Part shown: positions 5,890 through 63,337 of the stretch, piece by piece
Layout of the letters: each line of letters starts with the position of its first letter
How positions within the stretch are numbered: the stretch's first letter is position 1
NCBI GenBank assembly: GCA_038087875.1
Contig: JAXLNO010002632.1
Span: forward strand, 186,001 to 250,000
DNA length: 64,000 nucleotides
DNA from: Malacoraja senta
Taxonomy: Eukaryota
Direction of reading: 5' to 3'
Made by a program: the position numbers and the translations under genes
Notes under the pieces: model-generated
Seen by the model: only the letters and a program-made list of their open reading frames with translations
What the model was told of the DNA's origin: nothing
Databases searched by the model: none

Positions 5890-6072
5890 TCATTGCTGAG
5901 TTGGTTCCAGTGTTGTGTACAGATCTGCCAATTCAGGCTCCACTTCTGATAGCCTGTTCATTACACAACGTCTTTGCAGCTGTAAGACTGACACTTTATA
6001 TCGGGCTTCTGAGAGATTTCCCAGCAACTTGTTGAATTCTTCTGGTGGCTTCTCGGAACCAATAACGCGCTC
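5890..6072 (-). CDS. Cys-rich gene terminal coding exon a34 (ERVIGSEK...LEPTQQ*)
   Basis: tttcag acceptor, open to TGA at 5890-5892; helical E/L/Q/R-rich composition. Confidence 0.82.
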   Translation of the reverse strand, partial: ERVIGSEKPPEEFNKLLGNLSEARYKVSVLQLQRRCVMNRLSEVEPELADLYTTLEPTQQ

Positions 6073-9000
6073 CTGAAACATGAAGAGTTTGTGAAATAGT
6101 CATGATCAACATATATTTTACAAGAATATTAGTCATATTATTTACAGAAACTGTACAATCCATGTCAGAAGACAATAACATTTCTAGACTGGACAGGAAA
6201 ACTTTCAAGCTGGCCAATGCTAATCAGGCAGGGCAATGAGTCTGTAAGGTGATGGTAAATGAATCCCCAATTTCCACCTTGGGACTCTTTACCCAGTAAT
6301 TGGTTGCACGAATTGTAGTGTGGCAGGGCCCCATAGTTTGTCATTCACACTGAGTCCATCTCCAGTGACCGCCTCATCCACAACCATCCCCTTAAACCGT
6401 GATGTTTTTGGTCACCTGCACCACTATCACCTTTTGCCTGATGCCTTTTTTTCTTTTAATAATGTATTCATTAAAGCATCTAGAATATAACTAACTACTA
6501 CGAAGGAGCTGCTCTTAATAATTACAATTACTTCTATTACAATTATTTTGTTGTTTTGAGTTTCATTGTAACTCATTAAAAGAGATGAGATTTCTATTTT
6601 AAATGGACACTAGCATTGTACAAAGAATTACTAATATAAAGCATGAGCAGGATGTTTTGTAAAATCATTAATTTATTGTATGTATTTGATAACTGTGACT
6701 TGGACCCTAGTGTCAGCGAATAGACGTCATTAAGTGAAACTACACATAAGTAATTAAAGATGTTTTACTCAGTTTTCAGCTTCCTGGTCTATTGTGGATC
6801 CTGGGTCACTTTTAACGTACACAAGTGCTCCATGAAGAGTGCATAAAATTAAAGTGGTATTCTTCATAGAACCAAGCACAAGCAAATAAGTGTGTGTGCC
6901 TGTCTGTGTCTTTACCTTTATAAAGTTGTCCTGAATCCTTAGTTCTTGTTCTAAACATTCAATCTGTTGGTTGTACTCTGCAATCTTTGTTGTGCATAGA
7001 GAATATTCTTCATTCATTTTATCCACTTCATTCTCCAATTTCAGAATTCTGATCTGCAATAAATACGTGGGTGTCTGTCATTAAATTGACTCATTACTCA
7101 ATATGCCACAACTTGCTGTTTGAGACTGTACTTTGCAGTGCAAGGCACTGAAGAGAATCCAAAGCAAATAGACGTTCATCCCACTCCTTGTAAAGTTAGA
7201 GTTTTACAATGATGCATTATTCTTAACCGGACATGACTCATTTATAATTTTCTGATTTCCACATTCCATTGAATATATTGGAAATTCTGTTTCATGGGGA
7301 AGTTGGATTTCCTGTCTTGTGGGTAATGATTGGGTAATGATTTTGACTGACTGTGATTTAAAAGAATAATTTCCACATGTTGCAAGGATGGTGAATCATG
7401 CTGATAAACAATCCAACGGTGCCAACAGCTGTCTGACACATTGCCAAGGTGGCAGCTTTCCGAGCAAGCTCACTTAGTTCCCTCTCCTTTAGGCAAGATG
7501 CCAGCAGTAAACAGCAATCCCGCTGGAGAACCCAATACTCTTCTGCAGTCATCTTACAACTGAATCAATTTTTTATGTGAGTAACAAATATTTATATGAG
7601 TTAATCAGTAGAATTCTCTGCCTTTGCAATTTTTGATCCTGATTTTATAAAAACAAGACGATGCATCTCTAAATTGCAACGTGTATCTGTGTGAAACAAA
7701 GTGAGTGGAGAGATTCTGACTACAAATGAGAGACCAGGGACAGGAGTAGAAAGACGCTGTTTATTTTAATTTTGTCATCATTGCTTTGAGCTTGGTAGTA
7801 GTATCAATTTAAAATGAATAGATCTTCAACATTTGGGAATCTTTAGTATATATGCTCATCAATGTGATGGCAGTTATACAACCTTTCCAGAATACTTCAA
7901 AATGAATACTATTATGAAACGTGATGATGTATGCAACTCCAGTGTGTCAACTCTACTAAACGATAGCAAACATCATGCAACATTTTCAATCTATTTTCTC
8001 AATTCATTACTAATTTGTTATCTGCAAATTCTCAACAGTAGTAGTTTTGAGAGAGTTAATTATTTCAGCATAAACTGACACATTTGAAGATATGTCCATG
8101 TAAACTTGATCAATGCTCTGCTGTTAAACAATCTCCATTGTTAGTTGATCTCTTTAAAACAAGCAGAAAACATCTTTTGTCAATTGTTTACAATCTCCAT
8201 CTGTGTACAGAGTACCTGTGTGTTAGATTCCATAGAGTCTTTATCTTTATCAGGAGATTCCACTGAAAGAAAATCAAATGTTTGAGATTAATGATAGGTG
8301 TTAGCATTTTACTTCAAATTGCATTGTCAAATTCTCTCAGCAGAGCACCACCAATTAAAATATATGTGGCACATGAATGTTTGTTTAGTTTAGAGATAGT
8401 GCGGAAACAGGCCCTTCACCCCACCCAATCCACACTGACCAGCGATCCCTGTACACTAACACTATCCTATGCACTCTAGGGACAATTGACCATTTTACCA
8501 AAACCAATTAACCCTACAAACCTATCATCTTTGCAGGAATAACAAAAAACTTGATTAGTACGGATGCCAGGTGTTATGCGGAAAAGGCAGGAGAATTTGG
8601 TTAGGAGGGAGAGATAGATCAGCCATGATTGAATGGCAGTGTAGACTTGATGGGCCAAATGGCCGAATTCTACTCCTATCATTTATGACCTTAAGACATA
8701 CAAACTCCGTACAGACAGCTCCTGTAGTCAGGATTGAACCAGGGTCTCTTGCAATGTAAGGCAGTAACTCTACCGCTGCGCCACCCTGTTCGTTGGTATT
8801 TTAAGAATGAACTATATGACCTCTAGCTCTCTTCTTTATGTATTGCAACAGTAATTTGGATTGAACATTTTGAAGCTTATCTACTTCAGGGGGGAAGTTG
8901 CAGACTGTGTGATAGTAAGCACATGGTAGAGAAACCCCAGATTAATTGGGTTATACAGCAAAGAAGCAGGCCCATTGTCCCACGAGTCTAAACGAATTAG

Positions 9001-30000: not shown

Positions 30001-30512
30001 TGCCTACTTGTGGCCTATATCCTTCTGAGCCTTTATCATCCATGTACCTGTAAGAATGTCTTTCAAACACTGTATTTCTTCCCATCTCTACAGCTTTCTC
30101 TAGCAACTGGTTTCATATACCCAATATCCTCTGTGTGATGTATTTGCCCCCAGGTCCTTTTAAATTCTTTCCCCTCTTCCCTTCACTCTATGGCTTTAGA
30201 CTTCCCTATCCTGGGAAATAAACTGTGATCATCCACTATATCCATGCCCATCATGATTTTGTATACCCCTTTATGGTTAACTGCTCTGCTCCAGGGAAAT
30301 AAAAACTCATTGCCTAACCAATTTTTATTTATAACTCAAGTCCTCCAGTACTGTAACATCCTTGTGAATCTGTTCAGTACCCTTTCTCAATTAATGGGCC
30401 ATCTTGGTTGAAACGAGCAAGATGGGCCAAAGGGTCTGTTTCCATGCGGTGCAACTCTATTTTGTTTGAACTTAGGTTCAAATGACAACAAATAAATATA
30501 TATCTATCTAAA

Positions 30513-30543
<31 letters not shown>

Positions 30544-51500: not shown

Positions 51501-54500
51501 CAACAGTAGGTCTGGCCCTCTCTCAATCTCCAGTTGATATATTTTCAGCAGACCCATTAGAATATGATACCTTATCGTCAATTTACATAATACTTAGAAG
51601 GAAGCCATCTAATCAATACCAGCTCACAGAGCAAACCCATTCTCATGCTCCACTGAAAATGGATGAGAAACATTATGGAGTAATGGGCCTGGAATTGAGC
51701 CAAAGGTCCATTATTTATACAATTTGAAACAGACAATGGACATTTGAGATTCCCAGATCTTCCTCATTAGGCTACATTAACTTTTAATTCTCACGGCATT
51801 GACTAAACAATATTTCCCAAGGACTTTTCATGAAGAACGTGTGAAATGTAGCACAGTCTAGTAACAGAATAGGTAGCAATCCGAAGGAAGAATATCCGGA
51901 AACATGGACAAAATAAAACCCATTTGCTTTAAGCATTTAGCCGAAACACACACGGCATGGAGGCAATGATTAAATTTGTTAATAAAATCAAATGTTGTTT
52001 GATATTATACCTGCAGGACACGGTCCAGCACACACTTGGCCCCAGATACATGGATTATTGTTAGTTGCGACATTAGGGAGAACTCCATGAGGGGTAAAAT
52101 TATAACTGCCAGCAAGACAGAAGTATCCAGCCGCGCACTGTCCTTGAATCCTTCCTTCACTGCAGAGACATACATTTTAAATTTGTACACGTGCACATGA
52201 AAAATTATTACAATATTCATTTTTTGAAGCAAAACATTTCTAAAGGTTGAGATAATTTGAGTATATAATAATAGGATAAATACTGTGCAATAATTTATGT
52301 CCAAATAATAACCTTCGCACATCTCTGACAAAGGTCTGCAGGCTGAAACATTAACTCTATTTCTTTGCCCACAGGTTTGGTCATTCCTGTTTAGTACATG
52401 CAGCATTTTCTGCTTTCATTTATCTTTAGATTTTATCGTCAGGAAGAAGATTTTATCGTTTGAAGATTATTGTTCAACATGACCTTCCAATCAATGCAAG
52501 GAAGATAGGTGAACTTGAGTTTCCTAAGGGATGGCAAGATTCTATAATCGGAGAATTAGCACATTAGGAGGGGGAGCTATAGTAGAAGGAATGGTCTTTA
52601 TTAAATCTCAACTTTGGTTTTACATTCTCTTCTAGTATGGACTACAAAATATTATTTAACATGATGGAATTCATGTAAATGTTTTTAGAACATTTATCAG
52701 CAAATACAGAAGAAATTCTCAAAATATTTGAGGGTGTAGCATAGTATTTTGTAAAGGACAGTTCTACAATACAGCTTGAGACAATAATATAGAAATCTAA
52801 TGAACAGAAAATATTTGAAGTATGCAATATAAATAAGATAGATATGCCTAATAGAATCAAGGTTATTTTATCCCAATGAATGCTTCCTCCAAATAAATAA
52901 CTGAATGCCGAACGAACTGAATTCAGTTTTTTTCATTAGAAAACCAAAGAATGGGTCTCTCATGTTGTAAGGCAGCAGAATCCACTCGTTCAGTAGCAAC
53001 ACTTGTCTGTAGCTGGGAGTGTATTCCTGTATTGTAGCACATCTCTGCAAAGATCACATCTGCTCAGCTACATGGTGACACCATGCGAACTCATGATACA
53101 TCAGTAGGGACTTTCCATGCTGAAACTATTAACATGATGCTATAACTATTCTTTGAACTGTGTAACTATGATTCTTGTTTTTTTATGCGACTGTCTACAA
53201 ACGGCATTGGGCTGAACTGTAATGCCGTTTTAGCACAATGGAATGGCATGGAGTACTTTCCACATTACCTTTGTTAAAATTAGTGAATGGACATTTAAAG
53301 CTCAAAATGGACGTGGTCGAATATTCACTGAGAATTGTTACACCAACCTTCGCTACATGAAGCACTTGACCCTACTCAAAAGTGAAACAATAGTTTAAAA
53401 AAAATTTCAACACCAGATGAGAACAGAACCATAATGAAGGAGTGTCTGAACAGGAACAATTAGCCGACCTGCAGTACTTGCCAGTGGGACAAGACAGGCA
53501 TTGCCTTTCCTCCTTCAAGCTCGATATTTCCTCTGGTGTGAATGTTCCACGAGGACAAGGAATAGGAATCTGGGTACCTGTATGAGATTGTTACAAACAG
53601 GAATATGTGTTAGCAATCATTTTGAGGGGACTAGAGTATAAAAGCAAGGATATAATGATGTGATTTTATCAGATGCTGGTCAGGTCACATTTACGATATT
53701 GTGAGCAGTATTGGGCCCTATATCAGAGGAAAGATGTACTGGCTTGGAGGGTCCAGAGGTGTTTTATGAGAATGATCCCAGGCACGATTGGATTACCGTT
53801 TGAGGAGCGCTTTAAGGCTTTAGATCTAAGGCACTGATGGCTGTGGAGGCCAAGACTGTGTATTTTTAAGGCAGAAATTGAAAGGTCCTTGAATAGGAAG
53901 GGCATCAAAGATTACAGGGTAGAAGACAAGAGAATGGGATTGAGAGGGAAAAATAGATCAGCCATTACCGAATGGTAGAGTAGACTTGATGGGCCAAATG
54001 GCTAATTATGCTCCTGTGTCTTATGGTCATTTAGTTGTATGGATCAAGAAGTCAATAAACAATGAATGAAACAATCCTGTGTTTGGATTTCTTGTGCCAT
54101 TACATCCCTGAAGTAGATGACGAGGAACAATTATTTCAAAACAATTTACGAGCACCTTGAATAGTAAAATAAATGCTAATTGCAAAACAACAAAAACCAA
54201 ATGCTGGAAATTTAAAATAAAAATTGACATTACTGGAAGCACTCAGCAGGTCAGGTTGCATCCATGAAAAATGATGTGAAATTTTGAAAGACCTTTTGGT
54301 TGAGTGGGGAAGTGAGAAAAATTCATTTCTGTGACATAACTAATATATTTTCTTATAAAGCTCCAGTCAAAGCTTCAGAGCACATAGAGAACTGCAGCCA
54401 ATGACGGTTTTGAAATGCAACTCTAATTCCATCCCCTTCACTCACGCCAAACACAGGGGAGCTGGTGCTTTGCAGCAGTGAGATAATAACCAGTTAATAG

Positions 54501-57500
54501 GTTTTTCATTTCACTATGTCTGAGTAACATACAGTGCATTAGCAAGGACTAAAAGAACTTGCTACTTTTTTTTCAATAATGCCATGTGATCTTTTATGTT
54601 CAACAAAGGGAGCATGTGAGCTATATTACAACCCCCGATTCAGAAGACAGTATCTCTGACAATGAAGCACACTTGTAATCGAGACCAACAGTTCTGTAAA
54701 GAAAACACTTTAATTTCAGAATAGGACTTGTATCCACTAATAATTAGAGGCATAATTGCCATCATTAAACATGTACGCCTATCACATCCGCTAGGATGAT
54801 CACATGAAGCGACACATGTTCTGCAGCTTTTCTTCAGTAGGTTGGATTATGACACTGGCTAATAGGTGGTTGTATGGGAAGCCATTGGCTTGCTGCAGTG
54901 TTAGCGGCAACAGAGCTCATGCATTATATGGTGCAAGTAAACAAAATGCCAAGAGTCAGATGCCAGTACATATGCTACATTTCTGGACTTGGCACTGAGA
55001 GCAGGTTACATCAATGGACATCCTGCAGGATGCATGGATCAGGCACAATATCCTGCTTCATAACACTGAGTCTAAACATTGTTCAATTGAGTATAGAAAG
55101 TTGGGCGACGTATCTCATAGCTTCAGAAGTCTGGATACAATCCAGATCTCTGCAGCTGTCTGTGTGGAGTTTGCATGTGCTGCTTGTCCTAAATTCTCCA
55201 GATTTCTCTCATATTTCAGATATGTTGGTTGAGTAGATTACCCTAAGTACCTAACTGAGTGGTAGCATCTGAGGGAAGTTTAATAAAATATGGGGAGGAT
55301 GGGTCACAGGCAAATTATTGAGGGAATGGGATTGCTGTGATCCGGCATGGATTTAACAGGCTAAACTGTTGAACTGCCTGTCCAATTACCCTGACGTAGC
55401 CAGGCCTATTCACTGGTTTGCCCTCAACTAAGAAATGACGGAACTTCAAATAGGATATAATCCTCAAATTGCTCTTAAATTAGGCAACATTACTTGGAGA
55501 TACTGCCAACTCTCGAAAGCTTTATCATTATGATTTTGACAATGTGAAATGAACCAAAGCAAAATTTTGAACGGAAAAGTAAACTCAACAGAGAAAAAAA
55601 TAATAATGTGACTGTTTATGGAATTACTCACCTTCCGGGCAGTATGAGTGAGGTGGGCAGAGTTTGAGCTCTACTGTTGCAACATCGTTGCAGTAAAAGC
55701 CTGCCCGACATGGAATGCACACATGGGAATGTGAATTTGGCTGATATTTTCCCACGGGGCATGGGATGGGAGTTCCTGAACCTTTGGGACAAAAGTGTCC
55801 CTGGAAAATAGAAGACAAAAATCATACTTCACCGTGCACCAAATACTGAATGTATTTAGAGATTTCAATAGGTGATCAAACAATCCTGTCTTATAGAACC
55901 AAATGTTTTTGCCTGGTAATCTAGACACCAATGCACGACTTGAATGTGCTTTATATTCTTACACAGGAGGAAACATCCTTTCTACAACCAATCTGTCAAG
56001 ACCGCTCAGGATTTTAAGTGTTTCAGTCAATTCAATTCTCACTCTTCTGAACTCTTCTGTGGTTCAAGCTTAGCCTATCCAGTCTTTTCTCATGAGCAAC
56101 TCAACCATTCCGGGTATTGGTCAACGTGTTCTTACCCTTCCTTAAATACAGCAAGCAAAACTACAACATTACTCCAGATATAGTCTCTCCAAAGCATCTA
56201 TCACTGAATCACAACATTATATTGGTATTCAATTCCCCAAAGGATGAATGATAACACTGAGAGCTTTTTAATTACTTGCTGAACCTGCTAATGAGACTTT
56301 TGCAAACAATGCACAAGCACACTCATATTCATCTGCATCTCAGAGCTGTGCACTTCTTCATTTAGATAACATTTCTTTTTTATTTTCTTACCAAAAGTAA
56401 AAATACACATTTTCACATATTACATTTGCCCATTCACTTAATATTTCCACATGCCTTTCTAGCCTCTTTTATGTCAACTTTCTTTCCTACCTACCTGTCA
56501 TCAGAAAAGCTAACAACCATAATGTCAGTCAAGAGTGCACAACCTAAAAATCATGCACTTTAGCTCACTTCAATAATTTAAAAAAGCTATAATATTTGAA
56601 AAAAAGTTACACATAGCTACTAATAGTTATAAAGAAAACTTCAATATGTTTTGTAATTTTTGGATTTTTAAAATAAATGACACGAACTGTGTACTACAAA
56701 CAATCACGGCATAATATTTTACTTTGCACTTACCCCACCATTACAGGTGAGGGAAACTTGCTCACATATTCAGTTTTAGTTATGACTCATATATCAACAT
56801 GGTCAATAATAGTTAAAATAATAGCTTTCATTATCTAACTACTCCATTTAGAAGTTTACATTGAAAGTGAACTGTAGGCAAAGTTTGTTTGAATATACTC
56901 AGGAATTCTACTTTCATCAGGGACTGTCTAGTTATCCTTTCTCTGTTCTGTTTGGATAGTTAACCCACAGAATAACATGGTTGTGGTGGTGGTGGCCGGT
57001 TGTGAAGGAACAGCACTCTTTACTTTCAAGTATCAATGCATACCTGAGGGCAGAAGAAAGCATCTGGAGTAACTGAACTGTGATTGCCAGGACAGTAGAA
57101 CCCGGGATAACATGGCCCAGAGGGATGGCTCAAACCGTCCCTTGCACAGTAATAGCCAGAGTCGCATGCTATGCAGGATTCCAGTGAAGCTCCTCCTATT
57201 AGCAAAACATAATCTAGTTAAGTTGAGTAGCTCCAGCCCAATGGAATCAGAATAGACCAGCTACCCATTTTTGTACCATCTTTCCTCACACAAAAGTAAT
57301 TGAAGAAATACACATATACATTTATTTGTATAGGTTCAACAACATACAGTTTTTACCTTCACAGGATACAAGCCTTCTACTCAATTAGTGCACAATGCAT
57401 TAATCATGTTTACTTTATACAGTCAATTAACTGGTTTTGTACCACTGGCTTGATGTTAAAATGGTAGATGGAGGAAGATGTTATGTGTGATTTATGTGGT

Positions 57501-60500
57501 CAAGTATCAGGATGAACATAAATGAAAATGAAAACATTTGTCCATAAGGGTCCATACCTGTTTCCGAGTTGTAGGTTCCAGGTGGGCATGGTACAGGTAG
57601 TGTAGAGTTGCTGGGGCAGTAGGCACCTGTACTACATTCTCCACCATTCCCTGTGTGATTGAAGTGCATGGAAGGGCGAGAAGAATTGACTCCAGATTCA
57701 CAATAAAATCCATGATCGCAGGGACCTTCAACGTGTGTCAGGCCTAAGCTACTGCAATAGAAACCACCTAAGAACGATAGATTGAGAAATTTATTCTGAG
57801 ATGTTCTTGCATACCACATTAGAAACAGCAAAAACAACGCTTACTTCTTAATGTGTCATTTTTTCCCCTTGAAGTTTGTACACAACTCACAACTGCAGTC
57901 GACTACTTGGAATCTTTCACCGGCCATACTGAGATTAAGTTGTTTTCAGCTGGCATGGTATTTTCTTCACAATCTGAGTAGGTTAACATATGATGAACAT
58001 TTGATGGTACTGGGCCTATATTCGCTGGAGTTTAGAAGAATGATGGGGAACCTCACTAAAATGTACAGAAAATGAAAGGCTTGGATAGAGTGGGTGTAGG
58101 GAGGACGTTTACACTAGTAGGAGAGTTTAGGACTAGAGAATTGCCTCAGAATTAAAGGACGCTCTTTTATGAAGGAGATGAGGAGGAATTTCTTTAGCCA
58201 GACGGAGGTGAATCTGTGGAATTCTTTGCCACTGAAGGCTGTGGAGGCAAAGTCAGTGGATATATTTAAGGCAGAGATAGATAGATTCTTGATTAGTACA
58301 GGTGTCAGAGGTTATGGGGAAAGGCAGAAGAATGGGGTTAGGAGGAAGAGATAGATCAGTCATGATTGAATGGCGGAGTAGACTTGATGGGCGTAATGGC
58401 CTGATTCTACTATCTTATGATCTGAATTGTTCTTTAACTAAGTGCCTGCAAAGACATTTTAAAGGGCAGATGGGAGTATTGGTGTGGATTCAGAGTAACA
58501 TGTAGAGTCATAGTGTCATTCAGCATGGAAACAGACCCTTCGTCCCAACTCCTCCATGGTGACGATACTCCATCTAAGCTCGTCCCATTTGCTTGAGTTT
58601 GCCCTTTATGCCATTAAACCTTTCTTTTTAAATGCTGTTATTATATTTGCCATGTATTCCAAATAATGTAATGACAGCAGGCCACCTTCTCTAGAAACGT
58701 GAACTTAGTGACATTGCATGACAATTCTGTTGGTATTGGCTTTTTGTACCAGATTTGTTTAATTAACTGAAATTAAGTTTTCTGACAGCTGTGGTGGTTT
58801 CTGCCATCGTGCCTCCAGATCTCTGGTTTAGAATTGTGGTTAGCTACTCTGGAAATATAACCACTAAAGTACAGCATCTTGTGATTGTACTCTCAGAAAA
58901 CTATTATTCCACTTCCATGGTGCATTTCCTACATGGTGTTCACCCAAAATCAAAAGGATCATAGTTTTCACTGGGCCGTGTGAAGGAACTTTTACAAGGA
59001 CACATTAAACTCACTTATTTTCTCCTAAATCCCTCACATGCTCTATGATTATTTGGTGGTGAAGTGGGGCATTGGGTTTGTTCCCACCTAGTGTAAGTGC
59101 CAGGTGTTCAACAGTGTGTGATTTTCAATCCATCAAGGTCGACATTTCGAAAAGTTTAGGTTAAGTGTTAAGGGCCTGTCCTAATTGGCGATATTTTTGG
59201 CGACTGCCGGCATCATTGACTGACATATCAGGTCAGTGAAAAATACGCTGCGTGATGAAGTATGACGCGGCAGAGATATGCGGCGTGATGACGTATGACG
59301 TGTTTTTTCAAGTGGCGCAACATTTTTTTTGTTGCCGCTGGATTTTGAAATGTTCAAAATCTTTTGGCGACACTGATATGATGCCGGCAGTCGCCGAGAA
59401 AAATCACCGTGGGACAGGCACTTTTACTGAAACAAATTAATTATTTACAAGACATTCTTTCTATTGTGTTTTAGAGTTTTTTGCTGAAAATACTTTAAGA
59501 TTTGAACTAATTTCAGTATTTTTTTTTTAACTTTGCAAAGCACAGAAAGCAGAATTGTAGAAAGAGGCAAACACTCAATTGTAATGCAGGTATCACATTT
59601 TAAACAATTATCATTGAAGACCAAATCGTTGAATACTTTGGATTTAACAAAGAATTTGCATTGTGGATAAATACACACGGGATTATGCTTTAATAGATAT
59701 ATGTCTTTAAAGTCCACCAAGCCTCAGAAGACACATTGTCAATAATGGGCATTGCTGTTTGCCAATGCTTGGTGTGCAACCTTGTTATGCCAATGTGTTA
59801 TTGTCATAAAACCTGGGATGTTGGGCAGCATTGTGCTGCCAATAGATAAATGCAGGCAGGTGACAGATTATGAAATATTGTTCAAGAAGTGTTAAAGAAG
59901 GAACTGCAGATGCTGGAAAATCGAAGGTACACAAAAATGCTGGAGAAACTCAGCGGGTGCAGCAGCATCTATGGAGCGAAGGAAATAGGCAACGTTTCGG
60001 GCCGAAACCCTTCTTCTGAAGAAGGGTTTCGGCCCGAAACGTTACCTATGAAATATTGTTCAGTAGATGTTAGTACCAGGATGATATAGCGATTGCTGAG
60101 GGAGACCAACATCTTGAGAAAGAGTGAGTGGGGGGTTTGTGATCACGTTTGGGTATTAAAAAACTGGAGTGAAATTGAATAGGGATGTTGCAGCATAAGG
60201 AGGTTGGAGACTTATATTGAATGTTTGTTGGGTTGGGTGCAGGGGCCAGTTAAACATGTTAGTGAACCTGACAGTAACAGAACCTAAACAGAAAATGCTC
60301 AGAACCCTCCTCTGGGACAGCAACATCTGTGGGCAGAGAAACAGAGTTAAGTTTCTGGTACAAGATCTCTCATCAGACGAAGGGTCCTGCAACTGAAACA
60401 TTAACTGTTTGTTTCTCAACTGAAGCTGCCTGATGTGACTTGTGGGGTACCACAAGGCTCGGTGCTGGGACCCCAGTTATTTACAATATATATTAATAAT

Positions 60501-63337
60501 TTAGACAAGGGAATTAATTGTGACACCTTCAAGTTGGCAGATGACACAAAGCTGGGTGGCAGTGAGAGCTGTGAGGAGGATGCTATGAGGCTGCAGGACA
60601 ACTTGGACAGGTTGGGTAAGTGGGCAGATACATGGCAGATGCAGTATAATGTGGATAAATGTGAGGTTTTCCACTTTGGTGGCATGAACAGAAAGGCAGA
60701 TTATTATCTGAATGGCATCAGATTAGGAAAAGGGGAGGTGCAACAAGACCTGGGTGTGCTTGTACATCAGTCACTGAAAGTAAGCATGCAGGTTCAGCAA
60801 GCAGTGAAGAAAGCTAATGGCATGTTGGCCTTCAATGCGAGAGGATTTGAGTTTAGGAGCAAGGAGGTCCTATTGCAGTTGTACAGGGCCCTGGTGAGAC
60901 CACACCTGGTGTATTGTGTGCAATTTTAGTCTCCTATTTTGAGGAAGGACTTTATTGCTGAGTGCAGCGTAGGTTCACCAGGTTAATTCCTGGGATGGCG
61001 GGACTGACATATGATGAAAGAATGGGTCAATTGGGCTTGTATTCACTGGAATTTAGGATGAGAGGATATACTATAGAAAAATATTAAATTCTTAAAGGAT
61101 TGGACAGGCTAGATGCAGGAAAAATGTTCCCAATGTTGGGGGAGTCCAGAACCAGGGGTCACAGTTTAAGTATGAGGGGTAGGCCATTAAGGACTGAGAG
61201 GTGTGAATCTGTGGAATTCTCTACCACAGAAGGCAGTGGAGGTCAATTCACTGGATGTTTTCAAGAGAGTTAGATTTAGCTCTTTGGGCTAAAGGAATCA
61301 GGGGATATAGGGAAAAGGCAGGAATGGGTTACTGATTTTAAATGATCAGCCATGATCATATTGAATGACGGTGCTGGCTCGAACCATCAACAATAGTTTG
61401 TTGATTTTCAATTAATTGGATTCTGGTCTCCTTTAAATAGTACCGAATCAAACTTCACATCTTGTGAAGGCCTGCTTCAGTATGAAAGCTCCATGCAGTC
61501 TTTGGAACATCTATGCCAATGGTTATCGTAAAAGTGGTGTTAAAACATAGGTTGTATGCATTTTTGCAACATGGGTTGTATTAACATTTATAATTTTTTC
61601 CACTAACTTCAGTAAAATGCTCCAATGAACCTGTAGCTAAAATTGCCTTTGGCAGCATCTAAAAGGTTCACCAGCATTTGAGTATCCTTTAAAAGTTGGT
61701 GCAAACACAAGTTCCCACAGTGACATCGGCAGAAGTTTAATGTCACACGGTCTAGCTTAAGGCTTCTGTTGTATGGAGCAGGCAGAGACCATGCTGGATC
61801 AAAGAGAGCTGAATGTTTGTGATCGGTGGCTTCCATGCGTAACTTCATGAAGTCCTACAAGACATCTGGTAACCTCATGAACTCATGCACAAATGGCCCA
61901 ATCATATTTTGTAAATGTCTTAATGGGGAAGATAGATTAACAAAAACAATAGCAAAATCGTCCCAATTAAGGACCATATCTCTCACCAAGGCACGGAGTA
62001 CAGTCAGATCTCTCTCCCAGTCCCCAAGAGGCTCCAAATGTTCCAGCTGGGCAAGGTGTTGGAGATATACTGGTGCCCTTTGGACAGTATGAACCTTGAG
62101 GACAAGATTGAGCTTGCTCTCTGCAGAGAAAGAGATGAACACAAGGATGATTAGAAATATCCAATTGAAATCTTAAAAGAAATGTTGATGAAATTGGGTC
62201 TTCAGCAACAGCATGAAATGAAAGTTAGGTTATTTTATAATCTACCTAAAAGAAAAATACAAAATTGCCTACTTCATGCCTTCTAGTTTTAGACTAGGCA
62301 AAAAGACTGTTGAAATTACGTTATCCATATTCCTCATGATTTTAAATATCTTGAATAAGGTCTCTCCTTGGCCTCTCATGCTCCAGGGAACAGAGCTACA
62401 GTTTATTGTCTCTCCTTATAATTCAAGCCCTTCAATCCCAGTGATATCCTTGTGACTCTTTTCTGTACCTTTTACATATTTTCATTTGTGTTCTACTTTT
62501 CTTCTTTCATTAATGTTTTGATTTCATCATGTGGCACTCATGGGTGATGTTTGAATGCTCCTGATTTGATATTACCACCCAGACAAGTGAAGTGCTGCCG
62601 ACACTCCCTTTGCATAAATAAAGGCAAGAGGTTGTTATATGACACTGTGGTCGTAATATGACTGTGATATAGAATTCCCAGAAGATTAAAGAGTATGTAT
62701 CAACTTTAGATTATAGAGATACAGCATGGAAACATACCCTTCGGCCCACTGAGACAATGCTGACCTGCAATCACACACCGTGCACGGGCACTATCCTAAA
62801 CACTAGGGACAATTTACAGTTTACGGAAGCCAACTAACCTACAAACCTGCACATCTTTGGAGTGTGGAGGAAACCAGAGCACCTAGAGAATGCCCATGTA
62901 GTCACAGGGAGAACATACAAACTCCATACAGATAAATAATAATAATGATGAATTTTATTTACGGGCGCCTTATACCGAGGTCTCAAGGACACCTTACAGA
63001 GATTTATAGGACACCTTACAGAGTCTCAAGGACACCTTACAGAGATTTATAGGAAACATATAATCAGAATCAGATAGCACCCATAGTCAGGATCGAACCC
63101 GGGTTTCTGGCACTGTAAGGCAGCAATTGTACTGCTGTGCCACCCGTTCTACAAGAGTACCGCATAGACTACATTCCTGTACAATGCACCTTGCATCTTA
63201 CTTGTTTATGCACTGATATCCTTTGGGGCAGACAAAACATTCTTCTGCTCCTGTGCGGTTCATGAATTTCCCATCTTCACATGGTATTGGTGCAGCTGAA
63301 CCCAAAGGACAATAATGGCCCACAGGGCAAATATCAC
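5890..63337 (-). CDS. Large multi-exon gene (5'-partial, 34 coding exons, ~1,760 aa visible): single-pass membrane protein with tandem Cys-rich GCC2/GCC3 (ephrin-receptor-like) repeats and a long coiled-coil tail
   Basis: All 34 exons have AG/GT boundaries and matching phases. Their lengths sum to 5294 nt (+1 for the phase-1 start = 1765 codons), ending at TGA 5890-5892. Recurrent CPxG[YF][YF]C motifs; hydrophobic segment [25 protein letters not shown]. Confidence 0.9.
6916..7053 (-). CDS. Cys-rich gene exon a33, coiled coil ([17 protein letters not shown]...NFIK)
   Basis: ttgcag acceptor, gtaaag donor, phase 0>0. Confidence 0.85.
8216..8262 (-). CDS. Cys-rich gene exon a32, 47-nt mini-exon ([16 protein letters not shown])
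   Basis: ttttctttcag acceptor, gtactc donor; supplies the phase 1>0 shift needed between a31 and a33. Confidence 0.7.
8380..8787 (-). mobile_element. HE1-type SINE interrupted by an opposite-strand CR1 3' fragment (~8552-8690)
   Basis: SINE tail 8380-8540 and head 8695-8787 flank a ggttatgcggaaaaggcagg...tactcctatc CR1 end. Confidence 0.8.
8950..9325 (-). mobile_element. Old CR1 3' fragment
   Basis: ggcccatatccctc...ttcctatccatgt...accactctct CR1 3' motifs. Confidence 0.7.
9515..9772 (-). mobile_element. 3' tail of a non-CR1 LINE; inverted copy at ~16755-16835
   Basis: gaggtacagtgaaaagcttttgtt matches the reverse complement of caacaaaagcttttcactctacctcggtacacatgacaataaactaaac. Confidence 0.65.
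9790..10148 (+). mobile_element. Degenerate Penelope-like element, left part (interrupted by CR1)
   Basis: Ends in D-R-x-x-L-V-L-T coding remnant (gatagacttctcctggtccttacc), which continues at 14464. Confidence 0.7.
10275..13183 (-). pseudogene. CR1 ORF2 (AP endonuclease plus reverse transcriptase), disrupted
   Basis: NARS, ISETW, GDFN, SDHN (APE) and [12 protein letters not shown] (RT). In-frame TAG at 11963-11965 and a frameshift in a (TA)n run near 11520-11529. Confidence 0.93.
13220..14155 (-). CDS. CR1 ORF1: CxxC...CxxC zinc finger, coiled coil, SGNH/GDSL esterase domain
   Basis: CSGC/CVRC; GDSMVR, HIGTND and DGLHLN blocks; intact 311 aa. Confidence 0.92.
   Translation of the reverse strand: MWARAVYCSGCQMWEVMESDTPTDVHICVRCVEMGFLRDRVRNLEQQLDDLCLIRESEEVIEKSYREVATPRPREADKWVMVRKVKGQRQGLVSTPVAVHLENKYSCLSTVEGDSLPAGSNSGRASGTETSPIAQKGREKKRRAIVIGDSMVRGSDRRFCGRSQETRMVVCLPGARVRDVSERVQDILKSEGEEPEVVVHIGTNDIGKKREEVLKGEFKELGGELRRRSTKVTISGLLPVPRDGESRNGVRWRINAWLRNWCSGQGFKFLDHWDFFWGRSDLYRKDGLHLNPRGTNILAGRFAKTTGETLN
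14308..14462. repeat. 78-nt GC-rich tandem monomer x2 at the CR1 5' end
   Basis: ctgcaacggtccctggg...cccggacgctgc starts at both 14315 and 14393. Confidence 0.95.
14464..15112 (+). mobile_element. Degenerate Penelope-like element, right part with GIY-YIG remnant and terminal repeat
   Basis: tttcaccccaccagcc continuation; tgcacctcctccaatctcatctattgcattcagtgc ([12 protein letters not shown]); ends in the gatgctgcctga...ctgagtt terminal repeat. Confidence 0.75.
15745..15866 (-). CDS. Cys-rich gene exon a31 (LKKYTIFK...TSET)
   Basis: ttccag acceptor, gtaacg donor, phase 2>1. Confidence 0.8.
17090..17535 (-). mobile_element. CR1 3' fragment
   Basis: Reverse complement of the 57975-58422 type. 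Confidence 0.8.
17760..17878 (-). CDS. Cys-rich gene exon a30 (DSEIRKK...IFEDLIRIK...ILNER)
   Basis: tttcag acceptor, gtacgt donor, phase 0>2. Confidence 0.82.
17897..18005. repeat. Imperfect ~23-bp minisatellite (cacagttcacacccaaa...)
   Basis: About 5 degenerate units immediately intron-side of the a30 acceptor. Confidence 0.7.
18210..18613 (-). mobile_element. 5'-truncated L1-like retroposon 3' end with 11-bp target-site duplication
   Basis: tcgtgagtgtc at 18199-18209 and 18614-18624; A-rich tail on the minus strand. Family assignment is inferred. Confidence 0.7.
18976..19117 (-). mobile_element. Short retroposon end with (AAG)n tail and ~12-bp target-site duplication
   Basis: atcagg(t/g)tggat at 18964-18975 and 19118-19129. 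Confidence 0.65.
20847..20986 (-). CDS. Cys-rich gene exon a29 ([18 protein letters not shown]...TGIL)
   Basis: ttccag acceptor, gtaata donor, phase 1>0. Confidence 0.82.
21270..21605 (-). CDS. Cys-rich gene exon a28 (ESCDNLPYP...[14 protein letters not shown]...LHIMAHFKT)
   Basis: ttatag acceptor, gtaagt donor, 336-nt open exon, phase 1>1. Confidence 0.88.
22142..22267 (-). CDS. Cys-rich gene exon a27 ([30 protein letters not shown]...)
   Basis: atgcag acceptor, gtaggg donor, phase 1>1. Confidence 0.8.
22585..23712. repeat. Cluster of Penelope-derived fold-back repeats (approx. 22585-22790, 22828-22970, 23185-23270, 23490-23712)
   Basis: Each long copy has gctggagtaactcagc...ggcagcatc facing its own reverse complement. 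Confidence 0.8.
22884..22914 (+). ncRNA. Minimal hammerhead-like motif (aged)
   Basis: gt-CTGAAGA-A-[GGGT-CCTG-GCCT]-GAAA-CA-TC. Confidence 0.45.
24172..24361 (-). CDS. Cys-rich gene exon a26 ([11 protein letters not shown]...NITA)
   Basis: Strong acceptor ttttctctgcag; weak donor gtggca chosen for phase 0>1 continuity. Confidence 0.6.
24500..24887. mobile_element. Tc1/mariner (Tigger-like) MITE
   Basis: Right end gttataatgagggttatctg followed by TA; degenerate left end cggtctacccttttattacgg. Confidence 0.6.
25539..25711 (-). CDS. Cys-rich gene exon a25 ([12 protein letters not shown]...QIDPK)
   Basis: tttcag acceptor, gtaata donor, phase 1>0. Confidence 0.75.
26430..26925 (+). mobile_element. 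Degenerate Penelope-like fragment with GIY-YIG remnant
   Basis: [10 protein letters not shown] and [19 protein letters not shown] remnants, paralleling 14464-14800. Confidence 0.7.
27015..27132 (-). CDS. Cys-rich gene exon a24 ([10 protein letters not shown]...DTMK)
   Basis: ctttag acceptor, gtaaca donor, phase 0>1. Confidence 0.78.
28347..28507 (-). CDS. Cys-rich gene exon a23, coiled coil ([25 protein letters not shown]...QELK)
   Basis: aacag acceptor, gttcaa donor, phase 1>0; heptad-like leucine pattern. Confidence 0.88.
29578..29654 (-). CDS. Cys-rich gene exon a22 ([15 protein letters not shown]...)
   Basis: cttag acceptor, gtaata donor, phase 2>1. Confidence 0.85.
29915..30460 (-). 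mobile_element. CR1 3' fragment with a short inverted CR1 tail at its far end
   Basis: gaaacaggcccttt at ~29937 and gggccaaagggtctgtttcc at ~30424. Confidence 0.75.
30499..30543. repeat. (TATC)n microsatellite
   Basis: Direct reading. Confidence 0.9.
30949..31111 (-). CDS. Cys-rich gene exon a21, transmembrane helix ([22 protein letters not shown]...KWKPKWR...)
   Basis: cttcag acceptor, gtaagc donor, phase 1>2; ~25 uncharged residues followed by basic residues. Confidence 0.9.
31351..31573 (+). mobile_element. HE1-type tRNA-derived SINE (3'-truncated)
   Basis: Pol III A box tggcacagtggtag, B box ggttcgatccc, central ttcccacactccaaagacgt domain. Confidence 0.85.
32570..32815. repeat. Penelope-derived fold-back repeat
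   Basis: ~80-bp inverted arms (ctggagaacatggatagg / cctatccatgttctctgg) around a spacer. Confidence 0.8.
32838..33046 (-). CDS. Cys-rich gene exon a20 ([16 protein letters not shown]...LTPDWVFIT)
   Basis: actag acceptor, gtaaac donor, phase 2>1. Confidence 0.9.
33946..34252 (+). mobile_element. HE1-type SINE, full length
   Basis: A/B boxes; CR1-like 3' tail gaagggcctgtttctgtgctgtatc and (ctaaa)n. Confidence 0.88.
34639..34765 (-). CDS. Cys-rich gene exon a19 ([29 protein letters not shown]...NIT)
   Basis: tgtcag acceptor, gtgacc donor, phase 1>2. Confidence 0.9.
35427..35600 (-). CDS. Cys-rich gene exon a18 (ETEQPE...[23 protein letters not shown])
   Basis: gtgcag acceptor, gtgagt donor, phase 1>1. 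Confidence 0.87.
37510..37648 (-). CDS. Cys-rich gene exon a17 ([11 protein letters not shown]...VEEFLA)
   Basis: tctcag acceptor, gtcagt donor, phase 0>1. Confidence 0.87.
38083..38230 (-). CDS. Cys-rich gene exon a16 ([17 protein letters not shown]...QKEW)
   Basis: ttccag acceptor, gtgaga donor, phase 2>0. Confidence 0.87.
39217..39532 (+). mobile_element. HE1-type SINE, full length
   Basis: A/B boxes; CR1-like 3' tail, (ctaaa)n end. Confidence 0.88.
40292..40419 (-). CDS. Cys-rich gene exon a15 ([18 protein letters not shown]...DVELG)
   Basis: cctcag acceptor, gttagt donor, phase 0>2. Confidence 0.88.
40845..41197 (-). mobile_element. Penelope-like terminal fragment
   Basis: Terminal repeat (gacacaaaatgct...cttcagactga) followed by purine-rich element body. 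Confidence 0.65.
41371..41516 (-). CDS. Cys-rich gene exon a14 ([23 protein letters not shown]...DCHPE)
   Basis: ttcag acceptor, gtaaga donor, phase 1>0. Confidence 0.9.
41998..42210 (-). CDS. Cys-rich gene exon a13 ([16 protein letters not shown]...[12 protein letters not shown])
   Basis: cacag acceptor, gtgagc donor, phase 1>1. Confidence 0.9.
43778..43977 (-). CDS. Cys-rich gene exon a12 ([12 protein letters not shown]...CPAGFHCPK)
   Basis: tgtag acceptor, gtacgt donor, phase 2>1. Confidence 0.9.
44910..45947. mobile_element. Non-autonomous DNA transposon (hAT-like), 1038 bp
   Basis: Terminal inverted repeats taggtatgttacaaaa / ttttgtaacattgcta; cctcata duplicated at 44903-44909 and 45948-45954; no ORF. 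Confidence 0.8.
46428..46738 (-). mobile_element. HE1-type SINE, full length
   Basis: Reverse complement of the 39217 copy, sharing the gcttgcagc block. Confidence 0.88.
47378..47504 (-). CDS. Cys-rich gene exon a11 ([14 protein letters not shown]...NTPEQL)
   Basis: gccag acceptor, gtaagt donor, phase 1>2. Confidence 0.9.
48272..48496 (-). CDS. Cys-rich gene exon a10 ([16 protein letters not shown]...GYECPE)
   Basis: atcag acceptor, gtgaga donor, phase 1>1. Confidence 0.9.
49292..49471 (-). CDS. Cys-rich gene exon a9 ([14 protein letters not shown]...[10 protein letters not shown])
   Basis: ctcag acceptor, gtattt donor, phase 1>1. Confidence 0.9.
49523..49655 (-). mobile_element. Short Penelope-derived insertion, same subfamily as 59885-60046
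   Basis: Near-identical sequence; flanking agacttgaaa direct repeat at 49513-49522 and 49652-49661; minus-strand CTGAAGA...AAAACGTT core with a G12A change. Confidence 0.75.
50115..50322. repeat. Penelope-derived fold-back repeat
   Basis: gggaatggacag / ctgtccattccc inverted arms. Confidence 0.75.
50338..50463 (-). CDS. Cys-rich gene exon a8 (GFYCPEGT...CPPGYWCKE)
   Basis: cttcag acceptor, gtatca donor, phase 1>1. Confidence 0.9.
52011..52159 (-). CDS. Cys-rich gene exon a7 ([14 protein letters not shown]...CAGPCPA)
   Basis: ctgcag acceptor, gtataa donor, phase 2>1. Confidence 0.9.
53469..53577 (-). CDS. Cys-rich gene exon a6 ([13 protein letters not shown]...CPTGKYC)
   Basis: atacag acceptor, gtcggc donor, phase 1>2. 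Confidence 0.88.
53612..54026 (+). mobile_element. CR1 3' fragment with internal deletion
   Basis: EYKSKD...QYW remnants and 3' UTR tagatcagcca...atgggccaaatgg. Confidence 0.8.
55632..55800 (-). CDS. Cys-rich gene exon a5 (GHFCPKGSG...HSYCPE)
   Basis: ttccag acceptor, gtgagt donor, phase 0>1. Confidence 0.9.
57044..57195 (-). CDS. Cys-rich gene exon a4 ([17 protein letters not shown]...FFCPQ)
   Basis: aatag acceptor, gtatgc donor, phase 1>0; absent from the ORF track. Confidence 0.9.
57558..57767 (-). CDS. Cys-rich gene exon a3 (GGFYCSSLG...[10 protein letters not shown])
   Basis: cttag acceptor, gtatgg donor, phase 1>1. Confidence 0.9.
57975..58422 (+). mobile_element. CR1 3' fragment
   Basis: [25 protein letters not shown] remnants and CR1 3' UTR. 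Confidence 0.88.
59171..59422. mobile_element. PIF/Harbinger-like MITE
   Basis: Terminal inverted repeats agggcctgtcc / gggacaggcact; subterminal ggcgactgccggcatca / tgatgccggcagtcgcc; TTA on the left flank. Confidence 0.75.
59885..60046. mobile_element. Short Penelope-derived fold-back insertion with hammerhead-like core and 16-bp target-site duplication
   Basis: tatgaaatattgttca at 59869-59884 and 60047-60062; perfect 26-bp palindromic arms 59991-60016 and 60018-60043. Confidence 0.8.
60016..60046 (+). ncRNA. Minimal type I hammerhead ribozyme-like motif
   Basis: CTGAAGA-A-[GGGT-TTCG-GCCC]-GAAA-CG-TT; stem I largely lost at the inversion junction. Confidence 0.55.
60432..61383 (+). mobile_element. 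5'-truncated CR1 LINE (RT C-terminal half to 3' end), degenerate, inserted into a Penelope-derived repeat
   Basis: [29 protein letters not shown]; frameshifts after 60929. Confidence 0.92.
61987..62120 (-). CDS. Cys-rich gene exon a2 ([15 protein letters not shown]...CTPCL)
   Basis: ctgcag acceptor, gtgaga donor, phase 2>1. Confidence 0.9.
62706..63144 (-). mobile_element. HE1-type SINE with a nested ~140-bp insertion (~62934-63070)
   Basis: SINE halves rejoin across a cagata duplication; insert has an (AAT)n end and internal tandem duplication. Confidence 0.8.
63202..63337 (-). CDS. Cys-rich gene exon a1 ([46 protein letters not shown])
   Basis: ttcag acceptor, gtaaga donor, phase 1>2. 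Confidence 0.9.

What the first reader, a model, noticed from the sequence alone, without database searches (positions are those of the whole stretch)
5890..63337. Intact giant orphan receptor-like gene: Cys-rich GCC2/GCC3 repeat stalk, one TM helix, ~680-aa coiled-coil tail
Seen: 34 phase-consistent exons with no stop over ~1,760 codons despite heavy intronic transposon load, which argues for a functional gene. The N-terminus lies outside the window, so the protein is larger still. Established: long arrays of CPxGxYC modules are typical of ciliate, apicomplexan and oomycete surface proteins (e.g. cysteine repeat modular proteins) and occur only in short runs in characterised vertebrate proteins (SCUBE, SVEP1, ELAPOR). 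This architecture matches none of those. Inference: an ancient, uncharacterised eukaryotic receptor or adhesion family retained in vertebrates. My unverified recollection is that zebrafish si:ch211-286b4.4 and mouse Gm9195 are similar predicted genes. A ciliary or sperm role is a hypothesis.
Basis: partly seen in the sequence, partly recalled or inferred. Interest (0 to 1): 0.8.

Follow-up and report, generated by a model that had tools for sequence, protein, structure and literature searches.

The report
Ancient giant cysteine-repeat membrane receptor gene
The window holds most of an intact gene for a very large single-pass surface protein, one of an unstudied family that sequence searches trace from single-celled flagellates to vertebrates; its function is unknown.

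Summary
On the minus strand, 63337 down to 5890, I rebuilt 33 GT-AG, phase-consistent exons (1,742 codons plus stop) that align in order with residues ~726-2480 of catshark LOC119954022.

The gene is not an orphan. It is the cartilaginous-fish ortholog of the predicted, uncharacterised vertebrate gene named si:ch211-286b4.4 in teleosts and often mislabelled "zonadhesin-like" or "MEGF6".

Architecture in the window:
- 22 CxGxYC (Ephrin_rec_like) modules.
- A conserved ~370-aa membrane-proximal region containing a cupredoxin-like sandwich.
- One TM helix.
- A 655-aa tail.

The tail is only about one-fifth coiled-coil-like. It carries a strongly conserved LEDFxVRTLxDKLEDQ motif and a ~185-aa zincin-fold domain. 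That domain's H-x-x-A-H motif lacks the catalytic Glu in all 235 relatives aligned.

The same layout occurs in echinoderms, an ichthyosporean, Percolomonas, oomycetes and chrysophytes, so the family is probably very old.

No paper found characterises it. One preprint reports the zebrafish gene higher in testis than ovary.

No RNA runs were available, and a two-exon comparison with a sister species was inconclusive. Function (a long adhesion or sensing rod with a non-catalytic docking tail, possibly in flagellated cells) is inferred, not shown.

The parts
5890..63337 (-). Gene body in the window: 33 coding exons, 1,742 codons plus TGA. This is the C-terminal ~70% of a ~2,500-aa type I membrane protein.
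63202..63337 (-). exon 1 (aa 1-45), CxGxYC module
61987..62120 (-). exon 2 (aa 45-90), CxGxYC module
57558..57767 (-). exon 3 (aa 90-160), CxGxYC modules
57044..57195 (-). exon 4 (aa 160-210), CxGxYC modules. Unambiguous collinearity with the catshark ortholog starts here.
55632..55800 (-). exon 5 (aa 211-267), Ephrin_rec_like hit of 25.3 bits
53469..53577 (-). exon 6 (aa 267-303)
52011..52159 (-). exon 7 (aa 303-353)
50338..50463 (-). exon 8 (aa 353-395)
49292..49471 (-). exon 9 (aa 395-455)
48272..48496 (-). exon 10 (aa 455-530)
47378..47504 (-). exon 11 (aa 530-572)
43778..43977 (-). exon 12 (aa 572-639)
41998..42210 (-). exon 13 (aa 639-710), the last CxGxYC modules, Ephrin_rec_like hit of 24.0 bits. 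The conserved spacer starts here.
41371..41516 (-). exon 14 (aa 710-758), Cys-knot part of the conserved spacer
40292..40419 (-). exon 15 (aa 759-801), spacer
38083..38230 (-). exon 16 (aa 801-850), spacer
37510..37648 (-). exon 17 (aa 851-897), spacer. The cupredoxin-like sandwich begins here.
35427..35600 (-). exon 18 (aa 897-955), spacer
34639..34765 (-). exon 19 (aa 955-997), spacer, near-invariant YPVYxKD...NTNxxxDFGxFR block
32838..33046 (-). exon 20 (aa 997-1067), end of the spacer, PDW motif just before the membrane. The acceptor was moved to 33046 to match orthologs.
30949..31111 (-). exon 21 (aa 1067-1121): TM helix (31053-31109), [11 protein letters not shown] motif and PY-type motif IPPGY (30966-30980)
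29578..29654 (-). exon 22 (aa 1121-1147)
28347..28507 (-). exon 23 (aa 1147-1200): [16 protein letters not shown] motif (28437-28484) and coiled-coil-like segment 1
27015..27132 (-). exon 24 (aa 1201-1240)
25539..25711 (-). exon 25 (aa 1240-1297)
24172..24361 (-). exon 26 (aa 1298-1361). The donor is uncertain: a stronger in-phase donor at 24271 would shorten it by 33 codons.
22142..22267 (-). exon 27 (aa 1361-1403), N-terminal helices of the tail domain
21270..21605 (-). exon 28 (aa 1403-1515), core of the zincin-fold tail domain. The H-I-M-A-H motif lies at 21280-21294.
20847..20986 (-). exon 29 (aa 1515-1561), C-terminal helix of the tail domain. The donor was moved to 20847 to match orthologs.
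17760..17878 (-). exon 30 (aa 1562-1601). The donor was moved to the strong site at 17760.
15761..15866 (-). exon 31 (aa 1601-1636)
6916..7053 (-). exon 32 (aa 1637-1682), coiled-coil-like segment 2
5890..6072 (-). exon 33 (aa 1683-1742 plus TGA), coiled-coil-like segment 3

Best explanation
**What it is (shown).** This is a real, intact protein-coding gene. It is the cartilaginous-fish ortholog of the predicted vertebrate gene called si:ch211-286b4.4 in teleosts and LOC119954022 in catshark. The window encodes its C-terminal 1,742 residues.

**The protein (shown from sequence and models).** It is a type I membrane glycoprotein, read from outside the cell to inside:
1. A long array of disulfide-bonded CxGxYC (Ephrin_rec_like) modules.
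2. A strongly conserved ~370-aa membrane-proximal region with small Cys knots and a cupredoxin-like beta sandwich without copper ligands.
3. One TM helix.
4. A 655-aa cytoplasmic tail.

The tail contains a PY-type motif, the near-invariant LEDFxVRTLxDKLEDQ motif leading into a short coiled coil, a ~185-aa zincin-fold domain, and two C-terminal coiled-coil-like segments. The zincin-fold motif is H-x-x-A-H, with no catalytic Glu.

**The family (shown).** The same layout is found in widely separated eukaryotes.

**How it works (inferred).** The repeat array forms a long glycosylated rod that reaches far from the cell surface. The conserved juxtamembrane module and the cytoplasmic motif and pseudo-protease domain are the working interfaces, binding a partner outside the cell and docking a conserved partner inside. 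I read it as an adhesion or sensing receptor, not an enzyme, possibly acting in male germ cells or other flagellated cells.
For: **Gene model.** 33 GT-AG exons, consistent phases, no stop in 1,742 codons.

**Orthology.**
- Collinear alignment to the catshark, gar, frog, turtle and amphisbaenian proteins.
- 63% identity to catshark overall: 73-80% in the repeats from exon 4 on, the spacer, the TM region and coiled coil 1; 39% in the tail linker.
- The ML tree puts the window with catshark (100/99) inside the si:ch211-286b4.4 clade, with the expected species order.
- The downstream neighbour is CXorf65-like. Several reptile and bird models fuse the two genes (PF15874).

**Domains.**
- PF07699.
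- TM helix.
- Spacer model: pLDDT 88, pTM 0.88. Its top structural matches are cupredoxins.
- Tail-domain model: pLDDT 86.5. It matches selecase, jannalysin, Wss1, SPRTN, HtpX, SprT and M48/M78 folds.
- 0 of 235 aligned relatives have Glu at the HExxH position.

**Family breadth.**

**Expression lead.** The zebrafish gene is higher in testis than ovary (10.1101/650218).
Against: - No RNA run holds the locus, so splicing and expression in this species are unverified.
- Against a ~4%-diverged sister species, exons 10 and 11 show 5 differences in 352 bp versus 35 in 1,034 bp of flanking intron (p = 0.065). Four of the five are non-synonymous. This sample is too small to show recent constraint.
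- The structural matches are weak in absolute terms (Foldseek E ~0.007; VIA Z 5.6). Fold assignments rest on the consistency of the hit lists.
- The homodimer test of the exon-23 helix gave no verdict.
- Nothing here tests ligand binding, location or function.
- Three junctions and exon 26 are model choices.
Confidence: 0.8

Rival explanations
1. The tail domain is an active, atypical metalloprotease, so the protein signals by proteolysis in the manner of a membrane-tethered SprT- or Wss1-type enzyme.
For: - It has a zincin fold.
- Both His residues of H-x-x-x-H are kept in 152 of 235 relatives, and 150 of those also have a conserved Asp at +13.
- The window copy keeps H-I-M-A-H and the Asp.
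Against: - The general-base Glu of HExxH is absent in all 235 sequences, replaced by C, A, S or T.
- Many vertebrate orthologs have lost one or both His (N, Y, F or W) while the rest of the domain stays conserved. That pattern fits a binding scaffold better.
Confidence: 0.1
2. The locus is a recently inactivated or decaying gene in this species, kept open by chance.
For: - There is no RNA evidence.
- Four of the five exon differences from the sister species are non-synonymous.
- Introns are full of transposons.
Against: - 1,742 codons in 33 exons have no stop, and every splice site is canonical.
- Identity to catshark is 73-80% in the functional modules.
- The conserved motifs are intact.
- Exon divergence is lower than intron divergence.
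Confidence: 0.04
3. It is a zonadhesin- or MEGF-type secreted or matrix adhesion protein, as automatic annotation of its orthologs suggests.
For: Source names such as 'zonadhesin-like', 'MEGF6' and 'notch homolog' are attached to orthologs. The zebrafish gene is testis-biased.
Against: - Pfam finds only Ephrin_rec_like in the catshark, leopard and gar proteins. There is no VWD, MAM, TIL or EGF domain.
- A conserved TM helix and a long conserved cytoplasmic tail are present in all lineages.
Confidence: 0.03

Closest known systems
Predicted vertebrate genes si:ch211-286b4.4 (teleosts), LOC119954022 (Scyliorhinus canicula) and 'zonadhesin-like' LOC genes of birds and felids
   Same: They are orthologs. 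The full length aligns in order, the domain order is the same, the window falls in the same tree clade, and CXorf65 is the neighbour.
   Different: The architecture does not differ. The window copy is a new species' ortholog and lacks its N-terminal ~725 residues only because the window ends. The predicted mammalian models show no detectable tail domain.
Vertebrate paralog Gm32742 / RGD1562811 / si:dkey-103g5.4
   Same: It shares the spacer, the TM helix, the long tail and the zincin-fold tail domain.
   Different: It has no CxGxYC array (0-1 motifs). It forms a separate long-branch clade.
Characterised proteins with Ephrin_rec_like (GCC2_GCC3) repeats: SCUBE1-3, SVEP1, ELAPOR1/2, and the apicomplexan and ciliate CRMPs
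   Same: They share the Cys-rich CxGxYC module (PF07699).
   Different: From established knowledge, those proteins have short repeat runs combined with CUB, EGF, sushi or MRH domains, or (CRMPs) several TM helices. None has this spacer, the LEDF motif or the zincin-fold tail. Pfam finds none of those extra domains here.
Small zincin-fold peptidases: minigluzincins (selecase, projannalysin), Wss1/SPRTN/SprT, HtpX/M48
   Same: The tail domain shares the fold: helix, three-stranded sheet, 'active-site' helix and C-terminal helix. It also has an H-x-x-x-H on the corresponding helix.
   Different: There is no catalytic Glu in any of 235 members. There is no sequence match to Pfam or to PDB chains. 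The domain sits in the tail of a giant surface protein.
Cupredoxins (plastocyanin, pseudoazurin, amicyanin). The ephrin ectodomain has the same kind of fold.
   Same: It is a Greek-key beta sandwich of ~100-160 residues (VIA Z 5.6-4.0, ephrin-A1 Z 3.4-3.6).
   Different: The alignment shows no conserved Cys/His/Met copper-ligand set. The similarity is moderate and may reflect only a common fold.

Membership tests
si:ch211-286b4.4 orthogroup (uncharacterised vertebrate gene) | Full-length collinear similarity to named members | tested here: met
   tblastn chains of 21-29 exons in order for the catshark, gar, frog and turtle proteins. Alignment. 63% identity to catshark.
si:ch211-286b4.4 orthogroup (uncharacterised vertebrate gene) | Placement inside the clade and not with the paralog | tested here: met
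   ML tree: window plus catshark 100/99, vertebrate clade A 100/99, paralog B separate.
si:ch211-286b4.4 orthogroup (uncharacterised vertebrate gene) | Conserved neighbour (CXorf65-like downstream on the same strand) | tested here: met
   The exon at 662-~790 (minus strand) hits PF15874 and catshark CXorf65-like. Fused models in a turtle, a bird and snakes carry PF15874.
Ephrin_rec_like / GCC2_GCC3 repeat proteins (PF07699) | Pfam match at or above the curated cut-off | tested here: met
   Single exons score 25.3 and 24.0 bits against a cut-off of 23.1. Orthologs score 50-59 bits.
Zonadhesin | MAM, mucin, VWD/TIL domains | tested here: not met
   Pfam finds only PF07699 in full-length orthologs. 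The name comes from automatic annotation.
Zincin metallopeptidases (clan MA-like, SprT/Wss1/minigluzincin) | Zincin fold | tested here: met
   The hit lists are consistent, although individual scores are weak: PDB E 0.007-0.1 with TM by target 0.5-0.56; AFDB clusters SprT-like, DUF45 and IrrE; atlas M48, M78 and SprT.
Zincin metallopeptidases (clan MA-like, SprT/Wss1/minigluzincin) | HExxH with catalytic Glu | tested here: not met
   The motif is H-[CAST]-[LM]-A-H, with Glu at +1 in 0 of 235 sequences. The window has H-I-M-A-H at 21280-21294.
Zincin metallopeptidases (clan MA-like, SprT/Wss1/minigluzincin) | Zinc binding and peptidase activity | not testable with these tools
   This needs purified protein.
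Cupredoxins | Greek-key sandwich fold | tested here: inconclusive
   The top ~40 VIA rows and most Foldseek rows are cupredoxins, but the best Z is 5.6 and the best E ~0.01.
Cupredoxins | His/Cys/His/Met copper site | tested here: not met
   No invariant or near-invariant His or Met is listed. The one near-invariant Cys in the sandwich region (C336) has no His partner.
Coiled-coil tail proteins | Most of the tail in heptad repeats | tested here: not met
   A crude heptad scan finds 141 of 655 tail residues in three segments and none in the ectodomain. A folded 185-aa domain lies between them.

The most novel reading that the evidence does not exclude
The family is a surface system dating to the last eukaryotic common ancestor and specific to cells that build flagella, sperm included. 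An extracellular cysteine-repeat rod is coupled, through the invariant LEDFxVRTLxDKLEDQ motif and a Glu-less zincin domain, to a conserved cytoplasmic partner. Loss of the gene would impair gamete or flagellate-cell adhesion or sensing.
Probability: 0.15. Interest if true: 0.85.

Novelty: new variant of a known kind. Interest (0 to 1): 0.6.

Why it matters
Large conserved genes with no known function are rare in vertebrates. This one has a fixed modular layout that sequence searches trace across stramenopiles, a heterolobosean, an ichthyosporean, echinoderms and vertebrates. That breadth implies a basic cell-surface function that has escaped study.

The work here turns "uncharacterised LOC" into testable parts:
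- a conserved juxtamembrane sandwich;
- an almost invariant cytoplasmic peptide motif;
- a pseudo-protease domain not covered by Pfam.

Vertebrates appear to have split these parts between two paralogs, and the predicted mammalian models suggest further domain loss.

A zebrafish knockout, localisation in testis, and pull-downs with the tail are now obvious experiments.

The results also show that database names such as "zonadhesin-like", "MEGF6" and "notch homolog" for this gene are misleading.

Tried and rejected
- **RNA evidence.** The look-up of sequencing runs found no RNA run. All four holders are genomic contigs, two of them from a ~4%-diverged sister species. Junction support could not be tested.
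- **dN/dS.** Only two exons fell in the printed part of the difference table, which is too few sites. The catshark DNA for the ortholog's tail could not be fetched because the file was too large.
- **ESM Atlas feature search of a spacer exon.** It returned nothing useful.
- **Sequence-profile searches.** The tail domain and the spacer gave no real match against PDB chains or Pfam. The best row was a chance-level hit to baculovirus P35.
- **Homodimer prediction of the exon-23 helix.** No verdict: score 0.02, controls not run. This is not evidence either way.
- **A possible extra exon.** A candidate between exons 24 and 25 suggested by a weak hit at 26698-26757 has no acceptor and closed frames. 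A 24-nt microexon at 26777-26800 is possible but unverified.
- **Mouse Gm9195.** Only two papers mention it, in gene lists. Its relation to this gene could not be checked.
- **The CXorf65 label.** The label on a cluster mate of the best hit comes from read-through gene models, not from the tail domain itself.

Full report
**1. The observation**

The window is AT-rich vertebrate-like DNA without gaps. Cys-rich open frames lie only on the minus strand between 63.4 and 41.3 kb.

Their translations hit Pfam Ephrin_rec_like (PF07699, the former GCC2_GCC3). Two single exons score above the curated cut-off.

I used orthologous proteins as guides, then a splice-site and phase dynamic programme, then three manual corrections toward ortholog lengths. 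The result:
- 33 exons running from 63337 to 5890.
- Every intron is GT-AG and all phases are consistent.
- 1,742 codons and a TGA, with no internal stop.

The open points are:
- the exon 26 donor, 24172 or 24271;
- a possible 24-nt microexon at 26777-26800;
- a possible small exon in the 8.7-kb intron 31.

The introns do carry transposons. A LINE with esterase-type ORF1, endonuclease and reverse transcriptase lies at 10278-14164. Repeats of extreme copy number lie near 49.5-50.3 kb.

**2. What the gene is**

A conserved tail exon (21270-21605) found 183 protein clusters in an exhaustive search. A search with one of the full-length hits, the Rhineura protein, returned 87 vertebrate proteins. 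All are predicted and uncharacterised. They include:
- catshark LOC119954022;
- teleost proteins named si:ch211-286b4.4;
- bird and felid proteins auto-named zonadhesin-like, MEGF6 or notch-like.

The catshark protein (2,489 aa) aligns in order with the window from about residue 726 to 2480. The window therefore holds roughly the C-terminal 70% of the gene. Identity to catshark by region:

| Region | Identity |
|---|---|
| Whole alignment | 63% |
| Repeats (exon 4 on), spacer, TM region, first coiled coil | 73-80% |
| Zincin-like domain | 59% |
| Tail linker | 39% |

A maximum-likelihood tree of spacer plus tail domain pairs the window with catshark (100/99). It sits inside a vertebrate clade with the expected species order. 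That clade is sister to echinoderm proteins.

About 5 kb downstream on the same strand, at 662-~790, lies the first coding exon of a CXorf65-like gene (PF15874). Several reptile and bird gene models fuse the two genes, so the adjacency is old.

Another note of this scan calls the genome a skate. That fits the ~63% identity to catshark, but I did not verify it.

**3. Anatomy**

- **aa 1-~655.** 22 CxGxYC modules. There are 16 N-glycosylation sequons before the membrane.
- **aa ~696-1064.** A region conserved in every lineage examined, with invariant cysteines and blocks such as YPVYxKD and GTYVFxD.
  - An AlphaFold model built on a 33-sequence alignment of the catshark ortholog's region is confident: pLDDT 88, pTM 0.88.
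  - Its C-terminal half gives hit lists made almost wholly of cupredoxins. Examples are pseudoazurin (Z 5.6), plastocyanins, and ephrin-A1 (Z 3.4-3.6).
  - The scores are moderate and no copper-ligand set is conserved. I call it cupredoxin-like and nothing more.
- **aa 1068-1086.** The only strong hydrophobic segment. It is preceded by a PDW motif shared from protists to vertebrates.
- **The tail (655 aa).**
  - It starts with [11 protein letters not shown] and a PY-type motif (IPPGY).
  - Next comes [16 protein letters not shown]. This motif recurs almost unchanged in echinoderms and in two protist sequences, and partly in Chromosphaera.
  - A crude heptad scan marks only 141 tail residues as coiled-coil-like, in three segments.

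**4. The tail domain**

Residues 1373-1557 (exons 27-29) align with relatives over ~185 columns.
- They have no Pfam family and no solved homolog by sequence.
- The model, also of the catshark ortholog, is confident at pLDDT 86.5.
- Its neighbours in four libraries are small zincin-fold peptidases and their kin. These include selecase, projannalysin, Wss1, SPRTN, HtpX, SprT, M48/YgjP and M78.
- The helix that carries HExxH in those enzymes carries H-[CAST]-[LM]-A-H here.
- Among 235 aligned family members, none has Glu or Asp at the catalytic position. 152 keep both His, and 150 of those also have Asp at +13.
- The window copy reads H-I-M-A-H (21280-21294).
- Several tetrapod and ray-finned-fish orthologs have lost a His.

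The simplest reading is a non-catalytic zincin-like scaffold, perhaps still metal-binding, used to bind a partner.

**5. Breadth of the family**

The order [quoted passage not shown] is seen in:
- crinoids and a sea urchin;
- Percolomonas;
- Achlya;
- a chrysophyte;
- many environmental protist contigs.

Other relatives show only part of this order:
- Chromosphaera perkinsii (6,410 aa, 172 motifs) has the array, the TM helix and the tail domain. The spacer profile did not detect its spacer at the threshold used.
- The Saccoglossus model has the motifs and the tail domain but no TM call.
- The Phytophthora models show the spacer and TM but no detected tail domain.

Vertebrates also have a second paralog, named Gm32742, RGD1562811 or si:dkey-103g5.4. 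It keeps the spacer, TM and tail domain but has no repeat array. The mammalian models of the window's own orthogroup show no detectable tail domain. These last two points rest on predicted gene models.

**6. Function**

Nothing is shown directly. No paper in the library characterises any member. One preprint lists zebrafish si:ch211-286b4.4 among genes higher in testis than ovary.

From the anatomy I infer a long, rigid, glycosylated rod on the cell surface. The conserved interfaces sit next to the membrane on both sides, and the cytoplasmic end docks a conserved partner. That makes it an adhesion or sensing receptor, not an enzyme.

All named lineages that carry the family build flagella at some stage.

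**7. Limits**

- No RNA runs exist for this locus.
- The comparison with a ~4%-diverged sister species covers two exons. It gives 5 differences in 352 bp of exon against 35 in 1,034 bp of flanking intron (p = 0.065). Four of the five exon changes are non-synonymous. It is uninformative on recent constraint.
- The homodimer prediction gave no verdict.

**8. Verdict**

"Orphan" and "coiled-coil tail" need correcting.

The gene itself is already predicted in other species. What is new here is the description of a pan-eukaryotic architecture with two modules that have no Pfam family and no sequence match in the PDB.

Noticed in passing
window 662-~790, minus strand: This is the first coding exon of a CXorf65-like gene (Pfam PF15874 'Il2rg', 71% identical to the catshark protein). 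It lies ~5 kb downstream of the giant gene on the same strand. Several reptile and bird annotations fuse the two genes.
   Followed up: partly
window 10278-14164, minus strand (intron 31): A LINE with long open frames: ORF1 with a GDSL-esterase domain, an AP-endonuclease and a reverse transcriptase. It has the same orientation as the host gene.
   Followed up: partly
window ~49500-50300: Repeats of extreme copy number: summed contig depth reaches ~10^6 in the genomic runs of this species and its sister species. Related SINE-like pieces give recurring '[13 protein letters not shown]...' frames in several introns.
   Followed up: no
P0269, P0256, P0291 and relatives: A second vertebrate paralog (Gm32742 / RGD1562811 / si:dkey-103g5.4) keeps the spacer, TM and zincin-like tail domain but has no cysteine-repeat array. 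In three teleosts it lies on the same contig as the window's orthogroup, and in one of them the two genes have consecutive LOC numbers.
   Followed up: partly
P0193, P0190, P0185, P0188, P0231: Mammalian gene models of the window's orthogroup have the repeats, spacer and TM but no detectable zincin-like tail domain. This is either a real loss or incomplete gene models.
   Followed up: no
window 26777-26800, minus strand: A possible 24-nt phase-compatible microexon with fair splice sites (acceptor 4.9, donor 7.7) lies between exons 24 and 25.
   Followed up: partly
I did not examine it.
   Followed up: no
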